Positions 4,427 to 22,400 of a DNA stretch of 64,000 nt are shown in pieces. Numbering within the stretch: position 1 is the first letter of the stretch; every line of letters starts with the position of its first letter. The notes under the pieces were generated by a model, which was not told the origin of the DNA, did not search any database, and saw nothing but the letters and a program-made list of their open reading frames with translations. Where the stretch lies: NCBI RefSeq assembly GCF_040938485.1, contig NW_027270906.1:5022001-5086000 (forward strand), read 5' to 3'. The position numbers and the translations under genes are program-made. The DNA is from Diadema antillarum (lineage: Eukaryota).

Positions 4427-5985
4427 GTAAGTATGGAGCTTTAGTTTTTCGCGATGGGGACGTTCAGAGGGGGGAAAAACTGTTCTGAGCATGCGCAGAA
4501 TCACGTATCAAAGACGATCTAATTAGAGCTCGCGTCGTCTTGTGCTTTCACTACGCGTTCTGTGCTATTTTTACGTCCGCTCAATTCACGACGTAGAGAG
4601 CTACTTTTATGCACCTGTCATATTACAGGGGTGCCATTTTTGTGGTTGCGCTCGGCGCAGTAATCTAAACGTACTTTTGAATTTCAACACGACGCAGGGA
4701 AGAGGAGAACGTTCAGCTCAAACGTCCGCGCCGCAAATCTAAAGCTCTCCTCTTCTCTTCTCCGTCTCTTTCTATAGAATACTCGTACTGTAAATGTGAT
4801 CAAGTGGACTCATATCGATCGAGCAGAAATGATCAAACAATCGAAACAGTTCAAAATATTCGAGGGGATTCAGAATTTCGCTGTTCACATGTTCTTCACA
4901 AGGACGTGAAACAGATTTCGGTTGCAATCACATTTTACACGATAAATGAGATGATGCCATCTCTTTATAACAAATTTCGCTTCATCCCGATCTTTAAAAA
5001 TAACAATTATATCGATAAATCACTACTTCTTCAAACATTAACGTTTCAATCTTTGTGACAAAAAACAAAACAATGACGCTGTCCGAAGTAATAAAAACGG
5101 AAAATATAGGTACCCACCACGAGGGGGATTAAAAACGAGTGACAGAGTGACCAACAAATCCGAAAGCGTAACGTCTCGCCCACAGCGATTCAAAATCTGT
5201 GGTCGTACAGGCCCCATTTAGTATATGAACTCAGGCTGTTTGGACATTCAAGAAAAATAGGAAATCCTTATACTTTCGAATCTTGCGTTTCTGAAATTAA
5301 CATCAGAAAACAACAAAAACAAAGAGGCAAACAAACCAAAATCAACAAATTTCCAATTTCAAGATGTCGTGAGCTACTTATATAGTTCCCTTGTTCTTCT
5401 GTATTTTGCGGACTTACTACAGTATTTGTACAGTGTTCGATTACATGTCTGTATGTGTATGGCCGGCATGTGTCAGTCAGGTAAGTGAATCATGTGAAGA
5501 CCTACACGGATTGATAACCACAACCAGTTCGTGCGTTAAAGCTCTTTAGTTGAGACTATCTGAGCAGATTAGTTTTAACAATGAGTTACAGACAGACCAT
5601 CAAATCCTCAAGAGTGACGTCTCGCCCGCACCGTTTAATCAATACGATCTTCTGAACTCAAATTGCGTTTTAGTTTATGTACCTTTATGACTCTTTTTAC
5701 TCGGACCGGTAATTCAGTGTACGCGACAAGCCGTAAGAGGGTGTGATAATTATGTACAAGAGGATTGCGATACGCCGAGGTAGAACTGCGTTGGCAGACT
5801 CATGATGATTATCGCAATCAGAAAATTTGCGCCCTCTCTTTGGTTTGTCGTAATTGGCATAATATCGCACCAAATTTATTCAACCATTCTTGTTAAAACA
5901 GCTAAGACAATTTTTTCATGAATTACTGTAGTTTCATATGTATTGATTCTATGTTTTGGTCTGTTTTGTTTTGTTTTTCTCTCAG

Positions 5986-6230
5986 ATGATCTCGGTAAAC
6001 TAGAGCTGTTTATGCATGTTCTGCCACCCCGCCTAAAGCACCGAACCCTGACCGTGATCGGATTTGTGGAGTGTCGCGGCGGGACGGGCCCGATGGCCGA
6101 ACTGCAGGCACGCTGGTCCACGCAGTTGTTCAAGGGGAATATCGTCCTGCCCAGCTTAGAAAACATGCTTGCCGATATACAGACGACGAGGGACGAGGGC
6201 TACAAACGCTACCAACTCTTTCGTCCACGA
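5986..6230 (+). CDS. FMO: FMO penultimate exon
   Basis: Polypyrimidine tract plus CAG acceptor at 5983-5985, GTGAGT donor at 6231. Phase 1 joins the previous exon (G|AT=D). Encodes DLGKLELFMHVLPPRLKHRTLTVIGFVECRGGTGPMAELQARWSTQLFKG..., the FMO 'TL..IG......P..ELQARW' motif. Confidence 0.93.
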
Positions 6231-6451
6231 GTGAGTGAAAATATAATTAATATGCAACCCCCAGTTAGAAAACAGCGTGAAATCGTATTACAAAAAGTGA
6301 AAGTAATACGAGTTTCACCATTGGTAAAGTAGGACATGATGTAAACTAACGAAAATGATGTTTTTGGAAATCTAAGATTTTTACTTCACCTTCACCAACT
6401 GACTACGGAAATGAGGGCTTAATTGCCTGGCAACTTTCCTATGTCTATACA

Positions 6452-6850
6452 TTAAAGGGGAATTTCAGTTAAATGGGAATGTTCACCCCAATGCACATGT
6501 GGATTGAGTGAATGTAGTAATCTCTATAATTATCATAGTTGAAGACATCAGCGAAAATGAGAGGACAAGCGGACAATCCGTTCAAAAGTTATGAGTTTTT
6601 AAAGTTTCGATGCAGCCGTCGCTGAATGAGAAGAACAGTTTGTGGCGTCACTATGAAGAACAATGTAAAGAAAGTATACAAATACAAAAATAAACACATT
6701 ATCACTTTAATTTCTAGCAGTAATAAAAGAGCACTTATGACTTGTCTCTTTCAGAAAGAAGAGGGAATAATATATACCTTTAACATGATAAGTCAAGCAA
6801 TAAGTCGAGGGAATGTGTTGGCCCTACTTTTCAAAAAGAGAATTTGTAAA
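6452..6850. mobile_element. Truncated copy of the same Kolobok-like family in the last FMO intron; right boundary approximate
   Basis: ACATGTGGATTGAGTGAATG...GGACAATCCGTTCAAAAGTTATGAGTTTTTAAAGTTT shared with the 9431 and 49006 copies. Confidence 0.55.
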
Positions 6851-6919
6851 CTAAGCTCTATGTAGTGATTGGTTTGAACTTAATGATGAATATTTTTTCT
6901 TGACTTTTTCCTCTGCCAG

Positions 6920-7321
6920 GCGTCAACCGTGGAGTACCAGGACATGCTGGCAAAGAGCATGAATGCTTTACCGTCCTTTCTGGACCTGGTCTTCCGCGAC
7001 CCGGTCCTGGCCCTGCATCACTACTTTGGACCAGCACTACCACAGAGCTACCGTCTCGTTGGCCCTCATGCACAGAAGAACGCGCGGGAACGGGTCATCG
7101 AGAGCGCGCGCAGGTTGATGCACGGAATCACTCTGTCCACTGTGCGGCGGCTAGCCGACCCGAAGTGCAAAAGCGCTAACAGCCGCGGAGGAGAAGAGTG
7201 GAACTGTCGAGTTAACGTAGATGACGGGCTTTTGGACAGGTTATTCAAAGGCCCAGGTTTTCTGTTCTGCTCCGGCTGTGCTTTGATTTGCTGTTCTCTG
7301 TTGATAGCGAGCCTCATGTAG
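6920..7321 (+). CDS. FMO: FMO terminal exon with C-terminal hydrophobic membrane anchor
   Basis: CAG acceptor at 6917-6919, phase 0. Encodes ASTVEYQDMLAKSMNALPSFLDLVFRDPVLALHHYFGPALPQSYRLVGPHA... (FMO 'DP.LAL...FGP.....YRL.GP'). Ends FLFCSGCALICCSLLIASLM-stop (TAG 7319-7321). Confidence 0.93.
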   Translation, partial: ASTVEYQDMLAKSMNALPSFLDLVFRDPVLALHHYFGPALPQSYRLVGPHAQKNARERVIESARRLMHGITLSTVRRLADPKCKSANSRGGEEWNCRVNVDDGLLDRLFKGPGFLFCSGCALICCSLLIASLM

Positions 7322-9430
7322 TTGAAAATGTCATGCAGAGAACGACAGTTACCACCGGACGAAGCAAAGGAGGCTTTTATTATAACCACGGGCATCTATT
7401 CCCTTACAAGGTGTTACTAAGTAACCTATCATAATTACAATTATTATACTCCGTATGAAGAGTAAACCTAAATGTGTGCTTAATTTCTTTGACCAAAACA
7501 AGACAACACAAAGACAGATGCTCTCATTGGTTAACTAGTCTAAATTTTCAACCAATCAGCCCTCACCTAGACCCGGCTGGAGACCCACGAGGCCTCCACA
7601 TCCTTCATGGTGCTACCCTGTGACTGTAACTGTCATTTTTGCTTCAGTTTGTTAGGGTGTGAAACAGCCTCTCAAATGAGAAGTGCATTTTTTTGCAGTG
7701 ATCTGAAATTGGTCGGCAGAATTGGAAACAGTCGTGACTTACAACATACACTGTGGTACACAATAAACCTAGTAGTGTAAAGAAGTCTTAGTTTTAAGTA
7801 TAAGACTTCTGACGCAGTGCTGTAAATTCGCTTGCCCAAAATAATTCTTCACACTTCCTAAGGTGTATAATTTTCTGTCTTGCTTCAGTAGATTGTTGTG
7901 TTATGTCTTTTTTTTCAGTAATGTTGGCCATACAGTTAGAAGGAGTATAAGTCTGAAATTCTAACAGTTTCTTCTTGATGTATCTTTATGTATATCTTGA
8001 TTTGAGAATTATGACAATAAAGAAATGATTCCACAGATTAGTTAGTTTATTCCAATTCACCCAGCCTGAATGTCGAGCGAAATAAAATTGTGTTTGTTAC
8101 GGGCTCATGCACATTGTTTGTATAACAAGGATACGCATTCGTGACATCACAGTACATATATTTTGTAATGATAGAACATGGACTATTGTGGCGGGGCTGC
8201 ACCTGCAGATATTGGCTAACAGTGCTTGACTTTGACACTTCAATGAGAACAATGAATGTTACGTGATGTTAGATCGACCAATCACAAACCTTGTTGCTAA
8301 TAAAATGTTAACACCAGCTTCAGTGATTTCCTTTGTTCTACATAGCGAACTTAGTACAAATTTGTGGCTGATTTTAGAGTTTGGTATCAGGGACTTGAAG
8401 CAGCTGCGAACCATTCACACATTAAATGTATTTACCAATTTTCTCTATGCACATTAAATAGAGCCTGATATTTGATATCGTACTCAATCTCCCATATTTT
8501 GGTGCTTAGTAGAGTAACGATTTTTCATGAAGTTCCCACCTCAAGTGTACCACATGGCATGTTGTGTATATACGGATGATGTTATGCTTTATGTGTTTTG
8601 TGTGTCATGAGTAGCATATAGGGTGACTAATGGCAATATCGAAATACATTTTCTTTTGATGGAAGCACGCTTCTTTGCAATAATATTCGTGATGCTCTGT
8701 ATTGTCTTTAAATATAGTTCAGACTTCAGAAAAATACTGTTGTGAATGTTTGCGGTTCCGATATTTATTTTACATTTGCCCCAATATCAAGTCTTAATTT
8801 GACTGTTGGTGATTTATGTTTTGTTGCTTATAAAAAGAAACTTGTTAGCTTATGTACATGTTGCGAATCGAGTTGCTTTAAATAAATTGCATTGTCTTCA
8901 AGCGCTACACATTAATTATTTTGTGTAATGGTCAATGAAGTCTCTTTCGACAGAAATTAGATCTCGCACAAGAAAATACGAAAAACTGTCACGTTGGGAG
9001 TAATGAATAGAGTGGATTGCAGCATACAAAACGATACATTTTGACTGGATTCGTACAAGAAAGTTTGGAAGTTCGAACGTTTTCATGAATCGGTGATGTC
9101 GGTTGCAATTAAATACACTGTATGCAAATTAGATGGGGTAATGATGTCATCGCCTCACTATGGACATGCCTTTAAAATTGACAGGATGAATGATATCATC
9201 TTCATCAAAATGATTGATACAGATAATTAAGTATATACAACTTTCAGAACTGGGATGTAGATGCTAAATGTTTGACCAAAAATATGAATTCATATTCATT
9301 GTTGTCTCACTTGGCAACAGCTATTACTGTTATGTGAAAACATGAAGGGACATTTTAATGTAAGGTGTATTATGACGACAAACAAACACCTGCCTGCATT
9401 CGCTTTTAAACAGTTTATAATTCATGTTCC

Positions 9431-9835
9431 TTAAAGGACAAGGTCACCTGCATGTAAATATGGATTGAGTGAATGCAGTGATATCAGAACATTCTCGGTG
9501 AACGTTTGAAGAAAATCGGACAATCAGCGATAAAAAGTAAGGAATTTTTAAAGTTCTTGTGCAGTCACTGCTGGATGAGAAGACTACTACAGTTGTTATG
9601 TCACAAAGAAAATGTAAAGAGAATTCCATAAAATTTCTTTTTCTTAAAGTACACACTCACTCGACTTGTTACTGACGTATGATTATAGGGTAATATTATT
9701 CCCCTGCCTTCTGAAAGAGGCAAGTCGATTGCTCTTTTTATTATGGGAAAAAAAGTGAAAATATGATTTTGCTTTCTATCTTCTGCATTCAATCAATCCA
9801 CATGTATATTACTGTAAGTTGAACTGGTCCTTTAA
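9431..9835. mobile_element. Kolobok-like MITE, 'TTAAAGGACAAG' family
   Basis: TTAA|AGGACAAGGTCACC...TGGATTGAGTGAATGCAG left arm and CTGCATTCAATCAATCCACATG...GAACTGGTCCT|TTAA right arm. Homologous to 6452-6850 and 49006-49524. Confidence 0.65.
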
Positions 9836-9857
9836 CTAACTTGAACATCCACAAGGT

Positions 9858-9861
<4 letters not shown>

Positions 9862-9903
<42 letters not shown>

Positions 9904-10023
9904 CTACATTCGGTGACGTATACAGCTACGTTTATACTATCTTGTATATAATATAAAAGTGACGTAGAATATCTTATGGACCACTAAGTCTTTGAAGTTT
10001 TGTAGTAGAAAGGTTTATATGTA

Positions 10024-10067
<44 letters not shown>

Positions 10068-10241
10068 AATGAATAACAGCGATAGGGTCATAATAAATAG
10101 GTTCACACATGGTTCATAATAATTCATTTATGTATTTATTATATCCATTCATTTCATTTCATTCATTTTATTGTTTCTGTATGGTACAATATAATCAACT
10201 ATGATCACTTTCAGAAATAAAGACATGGTTCATGAAAATTC

Positions 10242-10276
<35 letters not shown>

Positions 10277-10483
10277 CTACATACACCTGTCTATTAAAGT
10301 AAACGAAATAAAGGGCGATACATAGTGTATCCGGTGGCGTATACAGCTACGTTTTGACGCTTAAATATATCATGGTTCGCTAAGTCTTTGAAGTAGGCCT
10401 ATATTCCGGTTTTAAAACAACAAAAAGTTTTGTAGTATACAAAAAAAGTAATTTGTTTCGAAGTCGGTTGGTCAATGCGCCCG

Positions 10484-10529
<46 letters not shown>

Positions 10530-10536
10530 CACACAC
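9862..10536. repeat. Cluster of (TA)n tracts (~9862, ~10028, ~10246) and a (CA)n tract (10489-10536), with a degenerate ~130-bp duplicated unit following the first and third TA tracts
   Basis: TAATTTCTACAT...CGTATACAGCTACGTTT...CTAAGTCTTTGAAGT occurs at ~9898-10010 and ~10271-10435. Confidence 0.8.
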
Positions 10537-10959
10537 ACAAACCAGAACTTTGACCAGACAGTGCTGTACTGCGAGATTTTCATATCAGTTGAATGCTTTG
10601 ACACTGCAATTCGGATTAATCATTAACTGCACCAGACGACTCGAACAAATTTGTACAATGCGTCGTGCCGTGCTGCCCCAGCGCACAAACGTTTGCGCGT
10701 AAAATGAAGTAAAGAAATCATTAAAAAGATGTATATGACTCACCAATGAAGACGCCTTGCTTGCATGACATTACTTACCACCTGCACGTAGATGATACAG
10801 ACCGACACTAATGAAAAATGGTGGTCATTCATGGCAGGAATTGCGATTAAAAATAAAACAACTATGCAGAGTTCCAGAGGGTTGACCGTGATCTGGGATC
10901 TCTGAACAAGCAATTTACCCTCTTGCTTTTTTGTACCTGTACCGTGAACCTGTTTCATC

Positions 10960-11190
10960 AACGAACTGCGTGTACATGCGAGCGATATAGTCGCGTTTAC
11001 GATGTATATTCCTGGAGCTTTCGACATGGCTACATGGATTCGAAGTGGAAAAGAATTCAACATACAACGGGGATAGTTTCATGCGAAAGCTTCCTAACTC
11101 GAGGAATAACTCGTTTCAGACTAGATCGGTTTAACAAGAGCGAAAATCATCGTTGTTCGCTTCTCGAGCCATTCAAGTACATCCCATAAT
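10960..11190 (+). other. Probable non-coding first exon (5' UTR) of the ST8Sia-like gene; start approximate
   Basis: CpG-enriched stretch ending in a consensus GTAAGT donor at 11191. A matching acceptor (TTTTTCCTTTACAG, 12941-12954) precedes the first coding exon. No transcript evidence. Confidence 0.35.
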
Positions 11191-11784
11191 GTAAGTACAG
11201 TGTATTCTATTGAAGATTTGTCAGTTCACTGTTCATAAGATTCAAGCCGCACAAACAGGTGCATATTGATTAAGTATGTAAATAGATATATATGCAGAAT
11301 AATGAATATAAATAACTATAGGCATAAGTGAGACCTACGCTCGTATCTATGAACACACAATGTAGCCAAATCAAATTCTTTTGTTTACTCTATGAGACCT
11401 AATTTCACCATTTGATAGCGTGTAAAATGAGACGATATCTGGTTTGTTTGTGCATTAGTGTGTGTGTGTGTGCTTTTTTTTCTCGCATATTGCATTAATC
11501 AATGCCAGAAATACTGCAAAACGTACGAAAGAACGTTGTTATGAAATGTAACTTTGAGGACTGCTACTATATGAATGAAGATGAAGACCATTATTAAATG
11601 TTTGTTTTTCCCCTAAAATTTCAAAGAATCTATCGTCGAATTATCTACTTCTCCAGTAGAAAATTCAATCAACACATTGCAATTACCACCGAAGTGTCAG
11701 CTGATTAGCGAATTATGAAAAAAAAATATTTACAGGTACGAGTCTTAGTGTTGTGAAAAAAAAATCACAGTAAGTTGGATGCCT

Positions 11785-12520
11785 TTTCTATGATATCAAA
11801 CCATCCTGTGACGTCAAACCTTATTATGACCTCAAACATTTGAACAGTGTGATATTCTAACCTTATCGTCATATCAAACGTTTCAGTTTCAGTTTCAGTC
11901 TTTTTTAAACAAATATTCACAGTCACCACTTACACATACACGTGGGAACATGTAGGCCTACATGTATCAGTCACAAAACTGAAGCAGGTTTATATACAGT
12001 GAATGTTGTGAGGGATTTAAATCAAGCACAGTTTTTTTTTTACATTATTATGATATTAAACCTAAATACTATATCAAACCCTATTCTGGTACCTTATTGT
12101 GATATCAAATCTTATCATATATTCATACTTAATCTCTTTGTGATATCAGACCATATTGTTTCATCAAGCCTTATTCCATTGATGTAAGTTTTCATTCATC
12201 CAGTTGAGATTCAATTAAGAAACAATAATCAGATTGCTACATGATCTGCACTTGCTGAACGATTTCACGTCTGATCCTGGACGCTCCATCAGCTCAACGT
12301 TTTTCACCCACAAACTGAGACAAGCTGATAGCATCCCAGGATCGGACATGAAACTGTTCTCGGAATTTAACAGTAGCAAGTCCAGATGTTATGATTTAAG
12401 TCTTGTTTCATAGCCAAGCCTTATCGTTTAATCAAACCATGTTGTGACATTGAACCTTTTTGTGATATTGAACCTTATTACTGTATCAAAACTTATTTTG
12501 ACATCAAAGCTTTGTATATT
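11785..12520. repeat. Degenerate ~18-bp minisatellite (consensus TTATTGTGATATCAAACC) in three blocks
   Basis: Blocks at ~11785-11880, ~12045-12180 and ~12410-12520 with recurring GATATCAAACC(T)TAT variants. Confidence 0.7.
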
Positions 12521-13005
12521 GTAAGAACAAACAGCAATACAAATGCATCTCGAAAAGATTGAGTGTACTCTATAATCATGAAGTACAGGCACTTAGCATA
12601 ATTATCAAGCAATTTTACGTTGCTGTTTAAAGCTTAGCAAGAAAGTGCTACTCAACGAAACGATTGTAATGCACTCCAAAATTACTACACAAGAAAACAT
12701 TTTTTTTTTTGTTCCATTATAATATTTTGTAAAGGTCACAAATCGATGCTATTTTCAAGTACAGATGGTATGAAACAATCTAATAATCTAAAGTTGAATA
12801 CAGTCATGCATATCGTTAGATTCTATAATTTTGAAAGGGAAAAACCAATTTATACAATACATTGGCACTTGTTGCAGCGATTATGTTTGTGTGCATTTGA
12901 AAATTTGAGTATTTTAGAATGGCATTGACATTGCTCTCTGTTTTTCCTTTACAGTGATGAATACAATTCTTTCAGCGTAAAGTACTGAAGTATAACATCC
13001 TTACC

Positions 13006-13121
13006 ATGGCGGGAAAAACGTCGATGATGAAGATGTGTGTCTTCCTGTTTGGATTTGTTGCCTGTTACGTCCTTCTGTCTGAAGTTCATCTCACGAGAGA
13101 ATGCTTCAAATTTTGCAACAG
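13006..13121 (+). CDS. ST8SIA: ST8Sia-like sialyltransferase (GT29), coding exon 1: cytoplasmic tail plus type II signal anchor
   Basis: ACCATGG start. Encodes MAGKTSMMKMCVFLFGFVACYVLLSEVHLTRECFKFCN. CAG|GTAAAT donor, phase 2, splicing in frame (AG|C=S) into the sialylmotif-L exon. Confidence 0.8.
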
Positions 13122-14280
13122 GTAAATCTGTCCTTTAAGTTTACTGGAATCTGGGTTGTAGTACCTCATGTAGTTGATGTATATGGGTCTACTTGGGTCA
13201 AGTACACTACAGGCTTCCTATGATTTTTTCCACATTAATTGCATTTAATTTCTGGTTTAGATAATATATAATTGATCAACGTTCAGAAGTAAGAGTGAAA
13301 ATAAAACTAAGACTCCACAAAAAATGGGAGGAGCAATCTGTCAGTACACGTAAAAATATTATAATAATCTTATATGCATTTTATTAATTATGTATTATAC
13401 AGATATGGGCTTTATAGAGATATACCTTTATAAACAACAATAAAGATATACTTGACATTACCGCGCAGGTGATTATTATCATTCCCCAGGAAAAGATTGT
13501 ATTTTCCCCAAAGCGTGCAGGGTAAATATTGTCAACAATATAGAAAAGACAATTTGTGTTATACTATAATATGTGGTCCACATTCACACAATCATCATTT
13601 CATTCTAGCTCCATCGCCAACCAGTCCAATTCTTGAATTATATTGCTCACTACATGTTTCAATGCTTATTTGAGTCATCCGTGATAATCTGGATGAAGGC
13701 GTGGCCGATATTTTCTTGCTCTCTGTTTCACTATGCAGAGTAGAAAATGTATCAAGTCAAAAATGGAGATTGCAAATATGCTGTATAGGTCCCTGCTCGG
13801 CATAGTTAATTCCTGTCATATTCCAACGCTTGTTAAGAGTATCCCACTGGAAAGAAAAATACAAAAATGAAGTAAGAAAAATAAACAAAGCGAAAAAAAA
13901 CCTTGAAGAATCCCAGTTACCTTTGAACGGCACAACTTGGGAACTCTCTTGATGTAGCACGATTCATGTTGAAGTCACAGTATTTGAACAGCACGAATCG
14001 TATTGAAACTTTCTCCAGTCATGATAGATACGTGGTCAGCATTTCAAATGTTGGTGCCTTAGTCATCTATAATTTTTATAGGTTTTTGTGATCAATATCA
14101 TTTTGACTTTGTCTGCTGTGTAAAAAGTGCGTTGATGTCCCAGTGTAGAAATCAAATAATGAATCACTGCACTGTGAGATAGTGCTGTCGGCTAAAATGA
14201 ATTTGCACAATAATAATGGTGAAAAAAAATCGCGCTGTCTGTTTCATTATTCCTTTTTTTTTTTAATCCTCTCCCACCAG

Positions 14281-14880
14281 CGACTCGAGTCAAGATTGCT
14301 ACTTACGAAGGACAGCCGTACTCGTTTACGACCAGAATGTCTCATCCCACGAAATGAGTTTTTCACAGAACACCCATCCAAGCATCAACCTTGGCAGCTA
14401 CGCCATGGAGGTCCTGTCGGGTCGCTACTTCGACATCAACTGCCCCGTCGACCACTACTGGCCCAGGGTCTCGACGCTCAGCCGCCGGAACGACTGCGCC
14501 GTGGTCGGCAACAGCGGCATACTGAACGGCGCAAACTGCGGCCGAACGATTGACAAGCACGACTTCATCATACGTGCAAACATGGCACCCATTCAGGGAT
14601 ACGAGGCGGACGTGGGAACGCGCGCAAACCTGACGGTTCTCAACTTCGAGACGCTGTTCTACATGCACAAGAACTTGACGCAAACGCACCCAGACGACAA
14701 ATGGCACCGTACCTACGTCGACAGGGCGACGTATCTCAATGACTCCGTGCTGTGGTACTCGAAGTCAACACTGCAGAGAAATAGCAGCGTGTACCTGAGG
14801 AACGTGGCCCATGTCCTGCAGGACCTTTACCGGTTGCCCATCCGACTGGCATACAGCTGGCGATCTGTGTCTGTCGAGAA
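14281..14880 (+). CDS. ST8SIA: ST8Sia-like coding exon 2: stem plus sialylmotif L
   Basis: Long T tract plus CAG acceptor at 14278-14280, GTGAGA donor at 14881. Contains CAVVGNSGILNGANCGRTIDKHDFIIRANMAPIQGYEADVGTRANLTVLN, sialylmotif L with the ST8Sia-type second Cys (xxCG). Confidence 0.95.
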
Positions 14881-15820
14881 GTGAGACTTTGAACACTTTT
14901 CTGAAAACATATACACACATTCTTATTCGTACAAACATGAAGTTTATGCAAATAATATACAATAATCATTGTTGACAATTCTGGCCAGAAACAAAATCAA
15001 CCACTCTAGCATCAACAAAACACCCCCTCCCGAAAAAAAAAAAAAATATATATATATATAAAACAACAAAATTAAAATGTAATTTCCGGTGGTGCCGCGT
15101 CCAATAGCGAAGAGACATCAATTCATTTTGTTTCACAGGGCTGATCAGTAAAGAAAAGTCTTTCCGAAGTCAGGTAGGGTAGAAGAGCCGTACCTTCTGA
15201 GCCAATTGGTGTATATCTTAACTATGTGCTCTCGCAGGGAAAGAAGACGCTGGGCATAAAGAAAGAAAATAACTATTTATCACTTGCGGGGATAATGCGT
15301 ATAATAATTGTCTTCCATGATGGTATATAATTTTACAGTAGAAGTATTATATCGTACCATGAATCTAACTGTTCATTGTTCCTATTTGCCGGGGTTTTCT
15401 TCTCTTTTTTCTTCTTATCTTCAGAGGAATACCAATAAGTGAAAAGTGTCACAGCCTATGTTATTACTGAGTACTCGTAGTTTGTTCATAGTTCCTTTAT
15501 GCATATTTTCTTTCACAGCTTTAAGGATTAGAATTAAACTGTATGTCGTAAGTCAAATAGCAACAGGAATTGTCATCGAGAAATACTGATAGTATTTCGA
15601 ATGAACACAACAATTTGGGGGTATTTCTATAGAGAATGAAGAATGTTTAGGCATCTAAAATTTGTGATAAATGACACTTTTTTTTCCTGCATAGTAGACC
15701 TATATATTGTGTGCTTTGGTGAAATAGATTATAATAGATCGTAAATAATCGTAAATAGTAGTAAATGGGAAAACGTATAGAGACACTATTGAGTATATAT
15801 TCATGTTATCATTACTGCAG

Positions 15821-16934
15821 GTTCTACGGCTTGACGCACTTCGCCACCACCGGTTTCAATGCATACGTCATTGCCAAGACTTTCTGCAATCATGTGACCC
15901 TCTACGGCTTCCACCCATCCAATCAGGACGAACTCGGCAATCACGTGGCGCACCATTACTACGAGGACGTCGAATACGAGTACAACAATGACGTTCACAA
16001 CATCCGCAGCGAGTTCAGAAAGTTACAGGAGCTGGAGAAGAAAGGCGAGGTCACCATCGTGACCGACGTCTGTCCCGGAGGCGCCCGAAAGAAGACCTTC
16101 AGCAACATCAACAAGGAGGAACTCTTCGACCCAAAGTTTCTGTTCATGCCAAAAGCCAACAAGCTGAAGAAGCTGTTCGACGTTGAAAATGAAGGAGAGG
16201 AAAACGATGAAAAGCTACACGATGATGCTGCAGACACGGCTGGGCCTGGCGGAGAGAACAGGGCGGGTGAGAAGCCTAGGACTGATTCACAATCTAAGAT
16301 GGCTACCGCCAGCCCTGGTCTTGGCATTGGAGGAAAAACCAGTGATACGGCATCGAAACAAGTAGCCTTTAGTAATCGTGTTTCGGGTGATCTAAAGTCA
16401 TTGACCGCAGAGATCAATAAGAGACTAGACGCTAGCGATGGCCTTAAATCAAAGACAGCGTCTGTAGCGGAGCCCAAGGATGACCTTATCATGGGGAAAG
16501 CTAACCTTTTAAGGAATTGGCAACCTACAAAGGAGGTTGCTCTTGCTGGCCTTAAAGACGATGATGACAATCGTGTCAGCGGAGGACTCAAAGATGAGAC
16601 AGTGTCGTGGAGAAAGACTGAAGCGCATCCTCAAAATGGATTCCCCGACGAAGGAAACGACTCTGACGATGTCTTTGCCCAACTGGAGCAGTGGAATTTA
16701 GGCTTTGATAGTGCGGCGTCAGATACCAGAACTGACACTCGTAGCAAGGGAGAAAAGACTTCGGGCCATGCAGACAGAAGTCTTGAATATGGCCAAACTG
16801 GCTCAGTTGGTGCCAGGGACTCTGACCATAAGATGGATGTGGCAGGCAGTCCCATTAGGACAAACTACCGCACAGACTATGGTAGGAACAACGGGAACAT
16901 GCTGGACCTTGGCGAGGGATCATCTAATAAATAA
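15821..16934 (+). CDS. ST8SIA: ST8Sia-like coding exon 3: sialylmotifs S, III and VS, C-terminal Cys, then a long extension
   Basis: CTGCAG acceptor at 15815-15820, phase 2 (AA|G=K). ATTGFNAYVIAKTFCNHVTLYGFHP (motif S), HHYYED (motif III), HNIRSE (motif VS), TDVC. Frame stays open to TAA at 16932-16934. Spliced CDS is 1830 nt = 609 aa. Confidence 0.95.
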
Positions 16935-17553
16935 CAGCTAATCTTTTTTGAGATTCTCAGCATATTTCAATGTATTTCTATTGAAATTTGGAATTTGAAG
17001 ACATATCGAACATTATTTGCTGACTTGGTGACTAATGCAAGAACAGAAAGAGTAGACGTAGCATTGTCTTAGCTCAATAGTTGTTCGTGTCCATACGCAA
17101 GAGGAAATTCGGACACGTTGTACTTTTCGTGGAAGTGGCTTTCTTTCTGAAACATCATTACTTTATTCTTTCAGAACCTTGCCTCCCCCTTCCCCCATCT
17201 TTCAAAATCAGTGCTATCCGTGTACCAACATGGTGTTAGTAAACATAATACACTGTGACAGCCGTTGCAACTTATAATTTACATTGATGGGAGCACTTAC
17301 TGAAATAATGGTTATACATAGCAGTGTATTATGAACAGAGAAGTGGGTTGTTCCACTGATGTTGTACAAACTACAGGGATGTCACCCGTGGATGTGTTAC
17401 AGGTAAGGTGATAATTTTACTGGTTGTACTACTCTCCGTATTGAAAATGGATTTGACCCGTCACCCACTGCTAACAAATTAAAATTCACATCAAACATTG
17501 TATTCGTTGTGAGATACAATTACCCAAGAAGTTGAGAAGAGAATACCAGCACT

Positions 17554-17589
<36 letters not shown>

Positions 17590-18053
17590 GTGCGTGTGTG
17601 TGTCTGTTTTGTACTGTCTTACTATTATTATTATTATTCGTCTTATCAGTGTGTTTATAATTTGCATTACTAAGTATGGTGATTGGGAAAAATGAAAATT
17701 ATGCATTGAGAACTGCCTTGTGTCTCAATGAATAAGATGAGTAACAGTAAAATCCTTGGTAAAAAGCGCAGTGAATTATAATTCATGATTGTTATCTGGA
17801 ACGTTATACTAACAGAGGTTTGCATTTGATTGAAGCATTAATGTATCACCCCTCCAGATTACAGGTACCTCAGCAACGACTTAAAAGCTCATAGCTGATT
17901 GGGAGGAGCTTGGCGGCTGCCATGGTACTAACCGGAATTCTGTAAAATACAATAATTGTTGCATATTAAACACGAAACAGGTCCCTGGACATCTTGTTTT
18001 AGTTCTCACACGGAAACAAGAGAAAAGATTAAAGTCTTTTTTTTTCTCCTTTT

Positions 18054-18441
18054 TTAAGGGGATGGCTAGTAAGTAACTGATCAGTGGGAATCAGTGGGAA
18101 TGCTGGGGGATGATTGTTCCAGTCCTTGTGGGATTCATTTAAAAGTACATTATTGTTGTGTGAAAATTATTTGCTTCAGAATGGTCTCATATTCAAGTAA
18201 TGTGCAGTGACGGGGCGATCGTTAACGGCCTGTTCACGATCGCCCCGTCACTGTACAGGCATGCTTACCTGAAAACATTAAACTGCACATTATTTGAATA
18301 TGAGACCATTCTGAAACAAATAATTTTCACACAACAATAGATATATAATGCACTCTTAAATGATTCCCACAAGGTTTGGAACAATCATCCCCCAGCATTC
18401 CCACTGATTCCCACTGATCTGTTACTAGCCATCCCCTTTAA
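18054..18441. mobile_element. Foldback MITE (TTAA-flanked) with ~150-bp inverted arms and a nested hairpin
   Basis: Arms 18058-18208 and 18282-18437 are near-perfect reverse complements. Internal perfect 18-bp inverted repeat at 18205-18222 / 18236-18253. Confidence 0.8.
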
Positions 18442-19413
18442 GTATGTTTTGATTAATCATCTTGTCTCCAGGATTTACTAAGTTTCACAGGGCAACTGAA
18501 CGGTTCCGGGAAAAAGAAAAAAAAAAGTGTTTGATATACGATCATTGATACAACATTCCTGATTATATGATGAATAAAATATTAAGTGCCTACAATATGC
18601 CAATGCACCATATACAGTTTCCACATGAAAATGAGCGTGTTCTGAGGATTTTCTTACGAAACCAGTAGAAACATTGAGGGTGTGGCCCTTTCTCTCATTA
18701 CCGAACAGACCATTATACGACTCTTTGGGGAGCAAACACTTCGTCTCATCGTTGCCTAGTTTGTCACAACATCAAAGGGTCTTACTGCAATAGTTCTCTC
18801 GTCTATCCTAAAGTAACAGGTGAACGTTCTTTTCAGCGTTATATTCACAATCCATCTCAGTAGGTAGTACAAAAGAAGTATAGAAGAGGGCCAGGAGGAA
18901 GAAGAAGGAAGTCAGTATTCTTCTCGAGATGTCCCGGGATTTATTTTCTCTTCATGGTTTCCAGTCTCTGGTAAATCCAGAAGCAGCAAAATGATGAAAA
19001 CAAAAGAGTCTCGTAATGTCTGATACTAAACGCTTTGTAAAGAGCAATCATACTCTTCTTTACATATTTGTTGTTGATGTTGTTTTTGACAATTAACATG
19101 CCCATGAAAACCCTCAGTAATAATTATGTTTATGTTTATGCAACAATAGATGATAAATTAGTCGAATTTTGACTGACATTGCCTTACCGCCACTGTGGAG
19201 AGAAACTTACAATGTAGTTCTATCACTGTGTCTTTGTCTTTGTCTGGCCTGTTAACCAGTTTTCAAGTTTGGGGTAATTGATTTTATACAACACACAGTA
19301 GGCCTACATGTATAGAGGAATCTTTCAGGCCACGTCCTTCAATGGAGAACTTTCTTGATGTCGTGACTTATGATCATTCGGTTGCTTTGTGTGAATCCGT
19401 TTGAGCGGGTGTG

Positions 19414-19450
<37 letters not shown>

Positions 19451-22400
19451 TACAGTATATCACTTTTGTATACATGGTATCATTTTCACAAAATGTTGTA
19501 TGTTAAAAAAAAAGTGATTCAGTAGCACATGTGAGAAGAATACAGCTGCTTATTTTCGTTCATACTATTTTCATTGTGAAAATGAGCGTGATATTGAATG
19601 ACAATAATTCAAATAAAGAACATCATAAAAGAAGTATGTGTATTTGTCTGTGTGTGTGTGTGTGTGCGTGTGTTGTGTGTTAGTCGATAAAAACTTTCCT
19701 GACGGAGAGAGTAAAATAATTTGTCTACCAACAAAAGAGGAGACAGACACACACCTGGAATCACTGTCTTGAGTGTAAAAAATCAAACATCGTCTTTTAA
19801 TGAGAATCGTGAAATAATACCTTTTGAGATCCACAAGTGAAGTGACAATATTTCGCCTCTCTTTGTGTCTCTTAATTTCTCTCTCAATTAAATTACAACT
19901 ACTACGATGACACATAAGAACAACAACATCACAAAAATGTCGGCCGAACCCGGGCAGGACTACCTACTATATACCATCTGGGATCAATTCCTCGCCCTTC
20001 TCTTCAGCACCTCTACACTTGAAATCACGCCATAACACTTTTGACAAAATATATTCAACAGAAACACTAAGGGTAACTATCATTCAGAATTCCTGTGTCC
20101 TGCGGAGAAATAGCATGATATAACTTTTGAATGAAATCGGGGGGAAAAGAAACTTGTATATTTTGTAACGGATGGGTATAGTAATGAATGAGACACAATA
20201 TATAGCGATATTCACTGCATGTTATTATGAACACATCTATCCATAGCAGGAATATTTTCAATAAAATACAGCTTATTGTATATATTTTCTCTTTTATCTT
20301 ACTTTTTTTTTTGCACAAGATACTGATTTGAGACAATGCTCTTCATTAGAATCTGTACTGCTTCACTGAGTTTTAGCTCTTTCACTGACAATTTAAAAAG
20401 AGTGTAATGAACATACATGGAAAACACAATAGATATTCTTGCCCCGAAGGAACAGAGACTATGAATTTGTATACGAAGTAATGAAAACGAACATGGCACA
20501 CAATTCGAGAACTTTGCAACTTTCGGCATTTCTAATAGAATTTGAAATCTCAATGCTCTTCAACTGTCAATTAAACCAATCTCACCACATCAAAGCATAA
20601 TCAGCAATTCTCCATTTCTCAATATATATAGAATACGTGATTAAGCCACGATAACCATTCTCGTACTTCACTGCTATTTTCTATTCTTATTCCCGTTTGA
20701 CGTCACACGCCTGACCTATAGAACACACTTCACATCTTGCCTCCCATCAGTATATTCACTCACTAATACTCACTCTCTCACACACACACAGACACACATA
20801 CAAACACAATCTCTCTCTAGTGATTCTACTACATGTAACTGTCATCACAGTGGAACGATGTTATCATAATTATTTCAACTAAATCGAAGAAGTACGGAGT
20901 GTATGTATAAACTATATAATGTGATTATGATACACACGCAGATGAACAATCCAATGCACATTTGTGTCAAGAACACAAGAGAAAGTACATACCCAGCACT
21001 ACAGGAATAACTCTAATTAGTATTGCTGCTGTGTAGAATTGGTATGGTAATGGTTAGTAAAAACAACGACACCAACAGACACGAGTAAAACGACAGCAAG
21101 AAAGAGACACATTTTTGGCATAGTTGCTAGTAGAGACTTGATGTACGCTCGGCATAATATTTGCTGTATCGCGTTCACTATTACGCCCAACATCATTCTA
21201 CGAACAAGAAGAACATCATAAATACTTGTTCTATTCTTCTCGAGATCACTGAACAAAGATATTGTAGAATAGTTACAAGCTAAGACAAGAGGAGCGCTTT
21301 AAGACATACTGCCTATAAAAGTACTGACCTATTGTTATTTGGAAACAAAACAATCAACTGATGTAATCACACAGTAATATATGCCTGTAACTCTGCCTGT
21401 GTTTATGTGCTCTCTAGCATTTTTCTCTTTACTTTCTTTTGTTTTTGCAAGTACAAATCATCTAGCTGGTTCATAGAATCAAGAATACATGGAACATTGG
21501 GATCACTACACATTTATCAAAGCAGACTTCAACAGAGATTCTCTCTATACAGATGTTGATTTCATATTAACACTACATGGGGCATTAACTATGCTTGGCC
21601 ATAGGTCATGGGTGCCGTGTTGCCACCGGTTACAGTATGCACAATGTAAACAGATTATTCAATGCACCTGTGTTGGCATCATTTGAACCCAGTGGCCTCT
21701 TCCTTTCCGTGTTCATGTTTAGACCAAATGCGTAACAAACACAGGCTACAACTGTCAATAAGATCTGGCAAAATTTGTAAATATAATATGTTAACATTCA
21801 TTCATTCATGCACTGAAGAATCTTTGTTTCTTTTAAATTGAATTGAAAAAAAAAAAAATACAATCCCAAAAGACCTGGTACACACCTCGTAGGAAGATGA
21901 TGTCTTTAATGAAGCTTGGAAATGAGCAGACAAACTCAGCACATGAAAGTATTAAACTAGACTCTGACTACTCTCAACTCGTACCCTCTTACATGTCCAA
22001 TTCATAGCTCCCACTAAGTATTCATACAATGTCAAGTCTATGTGAGTTCGACATTTTTTTCCAAAATGCTACATGCAGTATGAAGAAGACCCATGAGCTT
22101 TCAAATAAAAGAGCAAATAAATGAAACAAAAATATAAATACACACCACGGAGGATGTGGCTCAACTATCTCATCAATACAATCCACAGCATCATCACAAG
22201 CCACAATCCCGTATACCAGAAATCGCAAGTTACAATGACTGAAAAAAGAAGAAGAAATCATTTCAGTTTGCTCTAAGTCTTATGTGCTAGTGCTTGTATT
22301 CTCTTACATACTACATGAAGCAGCTAACTCACACACATATTCTCCTGTTGTTAACAGCTAACACTGATGTAAAGATATGAAAGAAAAAAAAAATGTGTTA

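What the first reader, a model, noticed from the sequence alone, without database searches (positions are those of the whole stretch)
16074..16934. Sialyltransferase with a ~286-aa C-terminal extension beyond the terminal cysteine
Seen: after ...GEVTIVTDVC (Cys at 16071-16073) the frame stays open for 286 more codons in the same exon. The tail is charged and Gly/Ser/Asp-rich, starts with a basic site (GGARKK), has an acidic run (DVENEGEENDEKLHDD) and an N-glycan sequon (NDS). Third-position GC appears to drop from about 16190 onward. Established: vertebrate ST8Sia enzymes end a few residues after this Cys, which is disulfide-bonded to motif L, and GT29 catalytic domains are normally C-terminal. 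Inference: a near-doubling lumenal, probably disordered, appendage retained by selection. It could act as acceptor-recruiting module, self-acceptor for sialylation, Golgi-retention or condensate module, or a cleavable secreted peptide. This is the most unusual coding feature in the window.
Basis: partly seen in the sequence, partly recalled or inferred. Interest (0 to 1): 0.72.

Follow-up and report, generated by a model that had tools for sequence, protein, structure and literature searches.

The report
Long disordered tail on urchin sialyltransferase
A sea-urchin (Diadema antillarum) Golgi sialyltransferase really does carry a 286-residue, disordered C-terminal tail that selection has kept, but it is an enlarged version of a 120-130-residue tail found on the same enzyme in other sea urchins, and the protein is already in RefSeq as an unnamed model.

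Summary
After the terminal Cys (16071-16073) the frame stays open for 286 codons to TAA at 16932-16934, in the same exon (15821-16934).

The window is Diadema antillarum. The gene has three exons and equals RefSeq XP_071493892.1, a 609-aa "uncharacterized protein".

The tail is coding sequence under purifying selection:
- Against the D. setosum ortholog (606 aa), dN/dS is 0.35 for the tail and 0.02-0.05 for the catalytic domain.
- The tail shows 8% nucleotide divergence with three in-frame indels. The 3' flank shows 15% with 18 indels.
- Both species stop at the same position.

It is not unique. S. purpuratus, L. pictus and an echinoid mRNA contig have 119-131-aa tails in the same exon, and starfish orthologs have 26-31 aa. 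In contrast, 46 of 54 other homologs end 1-8 aa after the Cys.

Only the first ~39 residues, a basic segment with catalytic-like GC3, are conserved across echinoids. The rest is acidic, predicted disordered (pLDDT below 50), fast-evolving, and has no homolog elsewhere.

The NDS sequon is not conserved. No Diadema RNA data were available, so a hidden intron is unlikely but not excluded. Function is unknown.

Verdict: a lineage-expanded variant of a known enzyme kind, of moderate interest.

The parts
13006..13121 (+). Exon 1: start codon, short cytosolic end and TM/signal-anchor helix
   Evidence: tblastn of P0001. GT donor at 13122. The exon peptide is found in P0090. AF2 predicts a helix at residues 2-24.
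14281..14880 (+). Exon 2: stem plus the GT29 catalytic part with sialylmotif L
   Evidence: Pfam PF00777 E=1.3e-25. AG acceptor at 14279-14280 and GTGAG donor at 14881. dN/dS 0.047 against D. setosum.
15821..16073 (+). Exon 3, catalytic part: sialylmotifs S and VS, ending in the invariant terminal Cys (16071-16073)
   Evidence: Pfam PF00777 E=5e-13, matching profile positions 202-271 of 272. The Cys is invariant in alignment A1. dN/dS 0.022.
16074..16190 (+). Proximal tail module, 39 aa: basic (K+R 23%), with high GC3 like the catalytic domain; conserved across echinoids
   Evidence: Alignments. It is 36-44% identical to other echinoids and 97% to D. setosum. GC3 is 0.74. dN/dS over the first 36 codons is 0.12.
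16191..16931 (+). Distal tail, 247 aa: acidic/polar (net charge -12), no Cys, no hydrophobic segment, predicted disordered, low GC3
   Evidence: Composition. pLDDT is below 50. dN/dS is 0.37. There is no homolog beyond the Diadema orthologs. It is not reliably alignable with other echinoid tails.
16665..16805 (+). Conserved island inside the distal tail: 47 aa starting DDVFAQLEQWNLG, with a predicted short helix; a candidate linear interaction motif
   Evidence: 46 of 47 residues are identical to D. setosum. Codons 201-240 have 5 synonymous-only and 1 amino-acid-changing difference. AF2 predicts a helix at residues 518-528 of P0001.
16262..16273 (+). G-run followed by GGTGAGA: site of the +1 G that truncates the model on the duplicate contig, and the only donor-like GTRAG in the exon
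   Evidence: L005 carries an extra G here, giving a TGA directly after ..ENRAG and the 388-aa model XP_071501622.1. The donor-like site is conserved in D. setosum, but it also encodes Gly-Glu.
16932..16934 (+). Stop codon TAA, at the same aligned position as in D. setosum; an AATAAA hexamer at 16926-16931 abuts it
   Evidence: The hexamer is not conserved in D. setosum.

Best explanation
The tail is real, translated coding sequence: the C-terminal part of the last exon of a three-exon GT29 (ST8Sia-like) sialyltransferase gene of Diadema antillarum.

The protein is a type II Golgi membrane enzyme, so the tail lies in the lumen behind the catalytic domain. That placement is inferred from topology. 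The tail has two layers.

(1) A 39-residue basic proximal module, G-G-x-[R/I]-K-[K/R] ... D-[P/T]-K-F-x-F ... L-K-x-x-F-[D/E]. All sea-urchin orthologs share it, and it has the same codon usage and nearly the same constraint as the enzyme. I infer that it works together with the catalytic domain, for example as an added basic surface for an anionic sialylated acceptor or product.

(2) A 247-residue acidic, intrinsically disordered region. It evolves fast and changes length between lineages: about 80-92 aa in other echinoids and 247 aa in Diadema. It still evolves at about one third of the neutral rate and holds at least one strongly conserved island. I infer that it is a flexible, charged appendage carrying short linear motifs for lumenal protein contacts, such as partner or acceptor recruitment or enzyme complex formation.

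Shown here: the open frame, its conservation and selection, its phylogenetic spread, predicted disorder, and the lack of homologs. Inferred: the lumenal location and every functional role.
For: - Identity. The window is identical to the D. antillarum contig. The exon peptides match XP_071493892.1, 609 aa.
- Selection, D. antillarum vs D. setosum. Tail dN/dS is 0.35, with Fisher p=3e-5 for dN against dS. Substitutions fall 21/13/35 by codon position, p=0.005. The tail shows 8.0% divergence and 3 in-frame indels, against 15.3% and 18 indels in the 3' flank. Only 0.7% of simulated tails with 16% random substitution stayed open.
- Second lineage pair. S. purpuratus vs L. pictus gives the same gradient: 0.05-0.08 catalytic, 0.18 proximal, 0.30 distal.
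- Transcript evidence in another echinoid. Logan contig L002 (2,663 nt) carries the whole 443-aa CDS including its tail without introns, so it is a spliced mRNA.
- Same exon architecture in S. purpuratus and L. pictus. Both S. purpuratus isoforms keep the tail.
- Disorder. pLDDT is below 50 for residues 332-606 of the ortholog. Mean hydropathy is -1.04 and there is no Cys.
- No polyA hexamer lies inside the tail.
Against: - No RNA run was listed for this locus, so retention of the whole tail in Diadema mRNA is inferred from selection, not observed.
- A donor-like GGTGAGA at 16267 is conserved between the two Diadema species.
- A second D. antillarum contig encodes a version truncated at exactly that spot, which might be a real allele.
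- The middle of the tail (residues ~101-200) shows no codon-position bias (11/7/12) and may be close to neutral.
- The proximal module is not predicted to dock or form a confident helix: pLDDT is 36-47, and its helical hydrophobic moment is below that of shuffles.
- Every functional role is inference.
Confidence: 0.75

Rival explanations
1. Hidden intron, exitron or alternative 3' end. The main mRNA uses the GGTGAGA donor at 16267 (or another site), so most of the distal tail is not in the major protein. The long ORF would then be a minor retained form.
For: There is one donor-like GTRAG in the exon, conserved in D. setosum. The GC3 drop begins close by, at ~16182. No Diadema RNA data are available. 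A RefSeq model on the duplicate contig ends exactly at this point.
Against: That 388-aa model ends because of a 1-bp insertion that creates a TGA, not because of splicing. Downstream sequence is conserved in the same frame, with position-3-biased substitutions, in-frame indels only, and a 47-aa island that is 98% identical. Introns of this gene diverge by 24% or more with many indels. In another echinoid the tail is in the mature mRNA. The GC3 drop occurs in all five echinoid orthologs.
Confidence: 0.12
2. A largely functionless read-through. The Diadema-specific extra ~165 residues arose by loss or shift of a stop codon or by insertions. They are tolerated as a neutral disordered spacer, and only the proximal module matters.
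For: The distal tail has no homologs. It has low GC3, unlike the rest of the CDS. Its length varies widely between lineages. Residues ~101-200 show no codon-position bias. The sequon is not conserved.
Against: Distal dN/dS is 0.37 with Fisher p=1e-4. Nucleotide divergence is half that of the flank, and indels are 6-fold fewer and all in frame. The stop position is conserved, and there is a highly conserved island at 16665-16805. Distal constraint is similar in camarodonts.
Confidence: 0.1
3. The conservation belongs to something else, such as an antisense gene (the 198-aa ORF at 15995-16591, minus strand) or a regulatory element, and the sense ORF is incidental.
For: A 198-aa antisense ORF exists. 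The minus-strand frame concerned has only 3 stops across the tail.
Against: Substitutions are biased to position 3 of the sense frame. The sense frame has 0 stops across 286 codons in two species. The purine-rich sense strand explains stop-poor antisense frames. Pfam finds nothing in the tail.
Confidence: 0.03

Closest known systems
RefSeq models XP_071493892.1 (Diadema antillarum, 609 aa) and XP_072167964.1 (D. setosum, 606 aa), both named 'uncharacterized protein'
   Same: The first is this very gene: the locus is identical to the window and each exon peptide matches. The second is the ortholog, with catalytic domain 98.6% and distal tail ~85% identical.
   Different: Nothing differs for the first. 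The models carry no name or functional note, and no paper found in the library mentions the tail.
Echinoid orthologs: S. purpuratus XP_001200590.2 (443 aa), L. pictus 'alpha-2,8-sialyltransferase 8F-like' (463 aa), Logan mRNA contig SRR6173504_31938 (443 aa)
   Same: They share the same three-exon gene, with the tail in the last exon, the same conserved 39-aa proximal module, the same GC3 drop, and the same gradient of constraint.
   Different: Their tails are 119-131 aa against 286 aa. Their distal parts are not reliably alignable with Diadema's.
Vertebrate ST8Sia enzymes: ST8Sia IV models and human ST8Sia III, PDB 5BO6
   Same: They share the GT29 fold family, sialylmotifs L, S and VS, and the invariant terminal Cys. 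ST8Sia III is the best PDB match (E=2e-24). Vertebrate ST8Sia IV proteins are the best hits outside echinoderms, at ~34% identity.
   Different: The vertebrate enzymes end 1-4 residues after the Cys. The urchin protein lacks the polybasic character of the ST8Sia II/IV PSTD and PBR regions (motif positions recalled from memory).
Asteroid orthologs (Asterias, Acanthaster, Patiria; 353-357 aa)
   Same: They belong to the same orthogroup (45-48% identity) and have a short post-Cys extension of 26-31 aa. Part of it aligns weakly with the K-x-[L/I]-x-D end of the echinoid proximal module.
   Different: They have no long disordered region.

Membership tests
GT29 sialyltransferase (Pfam PF00777) | Significant match to the family profile above the gathering score | tested here: met
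   Exon 2 peptide scores 90.8 bits (E=1.3e-25) and exon 3 peptide 49.5 bits (E=5e-13), against a cut-off of 23. The tail alone gives no hit.
GT29 sialyltransferase (Pfam PF00777) | Sialylmotifs L, S and VS with their invariant residues, including the motif-L Cys and the C-terminal Cys | tested here: met
   Invariant columns in A1 include C111, G115, N116, S117, G118 (L); T248, G250, C261 (S); H283, H284, Y285, E287 (VS); and C323.
GT29 sialyltransferase (Pfam PF00777) | Disulfide between the terminal Cys and motif L | not testable with these tools
   Both cysteines are conserved, but the bond itself needs a solved structure or biochemistry.
GT29 sialyltransferase (Pfam PF00777) | Type II membrane topology (N-terminal signal anchor, lumenal catalytic domain) | tested here: met
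   A hydrophobic N-terminal segment is predicted as a helix at residues 2-24. The lumenal position of the tail follows by inference.
ST8Sia (alpha-2,8-sialyltransferase) family | Closest sequence relatives are ST8Sia enzymes | tested here: met
   The best PDB match is human ST8Sia III, 5BO6, E=2e-24. The best hits outside echinoderms are vertebrate ST8Sia IV. No rooted tree of all subfamilies was built.
ST8Sia (alpha-2,8-sialyltransferase) family | Formation of an alpha-2,8 sialyl linkage | not testable with these tools
   This needs an enzyme assay.
Polysialyltransferases (ST8Sia II/IV) | Polybasic PSTD upstream of motif S, and a polybasic region (PBR) in the stem | tested here: not met
   In the columns aligned to the PSTD, vertebrates have K+R=9 and D+E=0, while echinoids have K+R=3-4 and D+E=2-3. 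The PBR-aligned region is shorter and not basic. The motif coordinates come from memory, so this is a rough test.

The most novel reading that the evidence does not exclude
The echinoid tail is a functional lumenal module that sets what this enzyme sialylates. The conserved basic proximal segment would supply the polyanion-binding surface that vertebrate polysialyltransferases carry internally (PSTD/PBR) and that this enzyme lacks. The acidic disordered region, expanded in Diadema, would act as an intramolecular regulator or as a docking platform for lineage-specific acceptors such as gamete sialoglycoproteins. If so, this orthogroup would be a candidate for one of the still unassigned sea-urchin oligo- or polysialyltransferase activities, and its fast-evolving tail would be a specificity determinant.
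Probability: 0.1. Interest if true: 0.65.

Novelty: new variant of a known kind. Interest (0 to 1): 0.4.

Why it matters
Animal GT29 sialyltransferases are described as ending at the catalytic domain, a few residues after the conserved Cys. An orthogroup that has kept a C-terminal lumenal extension across sea urchins, more than doubled in Diadema, departs from that architecture. No paper found in the searched library describes it.

If the tail affects acceptor choice, complex formation or enzyme turnover, it would be a new way of tuning a Golgi glycosyltransferase. Sea-urchin gametes and embryos carry unusual oligo- and polysialic acids whose transferase genes are not assigned (background in PMC2564942).

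If it is only a tolerated disordered spacer, it remains a clean example of stepwise growth of a disordered region: about 3 aa, then ~30, then ~125, then ~285.

On a practical level, the 388-aa RefSeq model on the duplicate contig is probably an assembly artefact.

Tried and rejected
- **RNA evidence.** The look-up of sequencing runs listed no run for the locus.
- **Homology of the tail.**
  - Pfam gave nothing.
  - The word search found only the D. setosum ortholog.
  - Full phmmer against 1.84 billion representatives gave 0 hits.
  - The tail is therefore not a captured known domain.
- **Internal duplication as the source of the extra length.**
  - TRF and repeat finding gave nothing.
  - The NRVSG[D/G]LK pair scores no better than shuffles.
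  - A BLAST self-comparison was uninformative.
- **Origin from the 3'UTR of other echinoids.** tblastn of the tail against the S. purpuratus, L. pictus and mRNA loci matched only the proximal 45-92 residues inside their CDS. The divergence is too deep to test further.
- **Amphipathic helix in the proximal module.** The hydrophobic moment is below that of shuffles, so this was rejected.
- **Mucin-like self-acceptor.** S+T is only 15-17%, and the single N-glycan sequon is not conserved. This is weakened but not excluded.
- **Polysialyltransferase membership.** The polybasic motifs are absent.
- **Truncated 388-aa form as a real allele.**
  - The duplicate contig shows 0 substitutions but about 22 small indels across ~8.8 kb.
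  - That pattern fits assembly error better than polymorphism.
- **Literature.** No paper in the searched library mentions a C-terminal extension on animal GT29 enzymes. The run accession of the mRNA contig was found in no paper.
- **Joined protein.** Each exon peptide was checked by reference against database proteins instead.

Full report
**Observation**

The ORF 15765..16934 on the + strand is real. The true exon begins at 15821, after an AG at 15819-15820. The Cys codon TGT is at 16071-16073 and TAA at 16932-16934, with 286 sense codons between them.

None of 20,000 composition-preserving shuffles of the tail stayed open. The other five frames hold 3-34 stops.

- GGARKK at 16077-16094
- the acidic run at 16179-16226
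- NDS at 16656-16664

GC3 is 0.73-0.83 up to about 16181, then 0.33-0.50 for most of the remainder. Total GC stays near 0.49 until the stop, then drops to the 0.36-0.42 of the surrounding non-coding DNA.

**What gene it is**

Pfam places the exon 2 peptide (E=1.3e-25) and the first part of exon 3 (E=5e-13, up to profile position 271 of 272) in GT29. It finds nothing in the tail.

A word search with the tail found one protein, a 606-aa "uncharacterized protein" of Diadema setosum, 86% identical over 99% of the tail. Its 90% cluster also holds XP_071493892.1 of Diadema antillarum, 609 aa.

The genomic locus of XP_071493892.1 is identical to the window from position 10006. Each exon peptide of the window is found in it. 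The window is therefore D. antillarum, assembly GCA_040938485.1, contig JBFRCO010000018.1, and the long protein is already a RefSeq model without a name.

The exons are 13006-13121, 14281-14880 and 15821-16934. I did not build a joined protein from the window. Database proteins were used by id, and the window exons were checked one by one.

**Is the tail coding and under selection?**

Nei-Gojobori estimates against the D. setosum locus (L001) are as follows:

| Region | dN/dS |
|---|---|
| Exon 2 | 0.047 |
| Catalytic part of exon 3 | 0.022 |
| Whole tail | 0.35 |
| First 36 tail codons | 0.12 |
| Rest of tail | 0.37 |

dS is about 0.18. The deficit of non-synonymous change in the tail is significant (Fisher p=3e-5 for the whole tail, 1e-4 for the distal part).

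| Region | Nucleotide divergence | Indels |
|---|---|---|
| Tail | 8.0% | 3, of 3, 15 and 3 nt |
| Next 1 kb of 3' flank | 15.3% | 18 |
| Introns | 24% or more | many |

Further points:
- Both species stop at the same aligned codon.
- Substitutions fall 21/13/35 on codon positions 1/2/3 of the sense frame (p=0.005). This argues against the 198-aa antisense ORF as the conserved object.
- Only 0.7% of simulated tails given 16% random substitutions remained open.
- Constraint is uneven. Residues 1-100 and 198-244 are nearly invariant. Residues 101-200 and the last eight are loose.

**Phylogenetic spread**

A search with the catalytic region found the orthologs of S. purpuratus (443 aa) and L. pictus (463 aa), an unnamed 443-aa protein from a Logan contig, three starfish (353-357 aa), a brittle star and a crinoid.

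I took all 89 proteins collected and measured the post-Cys length with an HMM of the catalytic part. Of these, 54 reach the Cys column:

| Group | Post-Cys length |
|---|---|
| 46 proteins (all vertebrate ST8Sia IV/VI, brittle star, crinoid, starfish paralogs) | 1-8 aa |
| 1 protein | 13 aa |
| Starfish orthologs | 26-31 aa |
| Three non-Diadema echinoids | 119-131 aa |
| Diadema | 283 and 286 aa |

In S. purpuratus and L. pictus the gene has the same three exons, and the tail sits in the last exon.

The Logan contig (L002, 2,663 nt) carries the complete CDS with no intron, followed by about 1 kb. It is therefore a spliced mRNA that keeps its tail. Both S. purpuratus isoforms keep the tail and differ only at the N-terminus.

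So the feature is an orthogroup trait of sea urchins, enlarged in Diadema.

**Anatomy of the tail**

Tail-only alignments show one clearly homologous block, the first 39 residues: G-G-x-[R/I]-K-[K/R] ... D-[P/T]-K-F-x-F ... L-K-x-x-F-[D/E]. This proximal block has these properties:
- It is 36-44% identical between Diadema and other echinoids.
- It is basic, with K+R 23% and net charge +4.
- It shares the high GC3 of the enzyme, 0.74.

Beyond the proximal block, the alignment with other echinoids is unreliable. The distal 247 residues have these properties:
- Net charge is -12, S+T is 16.6% and G is 11%.
- There is no Cys and no hydrophobic stretch, and the mean hydropathy of the whole tail is -1.04.
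- GC3 is 0.45, and the same GC3 drop occurs in all five echinoid sequences.

S. purpuratus against L. pictus gives the same gradient of constraint: 0.05-0.08 catalytic, 0.18 proximal, 0.30 distal. dS is near saturation there, so these values are rough.

AlphaFold2 was run on the D. setosum protein with the 10-sequence alignment. It gives a confident catalytic domain and pLDDT below 50 for residues 332-606. Only short helices appear, at 337-340, 351-358 and 518-528. The last helix lies in the conserved island at 16665-16805.

A full phmmer scan of 1.84 billion representatives found nothing similar to the tail. No tandem or internal repeat explains the extra length. The tail DNA is single-copy in the window.

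The NDS sequon is replaced in D. setosum.

**The truncated twin**

D. antillarum has a second RefSeq model, XP_071501622.1, of 388 aa. It lies on contig JBFRCO010000604.1 and ends after ..ENRAG.

That contig is 99.3% identical to the window over 14.9 kb. It has one extra G in the run at 16262-16264, which creates a TGA.

Between window positions 12922 and 21732 the two contigs differ by no substitution at all, but by about 22 small indels, mostly 1-bp insertions. Real haplotypes of an outbred urchin would differ mainly by substitutions. I therefore read this as a poorly polished duplicate of the same haplotype. A real frameshift allele is not excluded.

The same spot is the only donor-like GTRAG in the exon and is conserved in D. 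setosum. It also encodes Gly-Glu, so its conservation proves nothing.

**Hidden intron or early polyadenylation**

No RNA run was listed for this locus, so this was not tested directly in Diadema. There are four arguments against it:
- The frame, codon-position bias and in-frame indels continue to the stop.
- The island at 16665-16805 is more conserved than the synonymous rate allows for non-coding DNA.
- No AATAAA or ATTAAA occurs between 15800 and 16926.
- The homologous tail is present in a mature mRNA of another echinoid.

**Family placement**

The best solved relative is human ST8Sia III (5BO6, E=2e-24). The best hits outside echinoderms are vertebrate ST8Sia IV at about 34% identity.

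The columns aligned to the polybasic PSTD and PBR regions of ST8Sia IV are not basic in the urchin proteins (motif positions recalled from memory). I therefore file it as GT29, ST8Sia-like, and not as a polysialyltransferase.

The 2008 survey of ST8Sia genes (PMC2564942) lists S. purpuratus sequences, including a divergent "ST8Sia EX" group, but says nothing about C-terminal extensions. Searches for such extensions on GT29 enzymes found no description.

**How it most likely works**

Shown: a translated-looking, selectively maintained, disordered C-terminal region with a conserved basic proximal module and at least one conserved distal island.

Inferred:
- The tail lies in the Golgi lumen.
- The proximal module acts with the catalytic domain, possibly as an extra basic surface for anionic sialylated substrates.
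- The distal region is a flexible charged appendage with linear motifs for protein contacts.

An amphipathic helix in the proximal module was tested and is not supported. A mucin-like self-acceptor role is weakened by the modest S/T content and the unconserved sequon. Cleavage at the conserved dibasic site remains possible but untested.

**Verdict**

The tail is the longest known version of a trait shared by sea-urchin orthologs, already present in public protein models but not described in the literature searched. It is a new variant of a known enzyme kind, of moderate interest, with function open.

Noticed in passing
window 7027-21899 vs L005 (D. antillarum contig JBFRCO010000604.1): A second contig of the same assembly duplicates at least 15 kb of this region at 99.3% identity. 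A long central stretch has no substitutions but many 1-bp indels. This looks like an unpurged, poorly polished duplicate, and it yields a truncated 388-aa RefSeq model of the same gene (XP_071501622.1).
   Followed up: partly
L004:6338-7042 (Lytechinus pictus): About 0.7 kb downstream of the L. pictus ortholog lies a second copy of its last exon, including the tail and 3' flank, ~99% identical in DNA over 875 bp. It is either a very recent local duplication or an assembly artefact.
   Followed up: partly
window ~5674-9033 (aligned to L001:1967-5725): An FMO-like (flavin monooxygenase, PF00743) gene lies upstream of the sialyltransferase in both D. setosum and on the duplicate D. antillarum contig. 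The window aligns to that region at ~85%, so synteny is conserved.
   Followed up: no
window 15995-16591 (-): A 198-aa antisense ORF lies inside the tail. It is best explained by the purine-rich sense strand, and the substitution pattern follows the sense frame.
   Followed up: yes
window 54922-55378: A run of 457 N (assembly gap or masked). It was left untouched.
   Followed up: no
window 49019-49159 and 49406-49511: Short dispersed repeat copies matching L001:3165-3318 at ~74% in both orientations. Probably an interspersed element.
   Followed up: no
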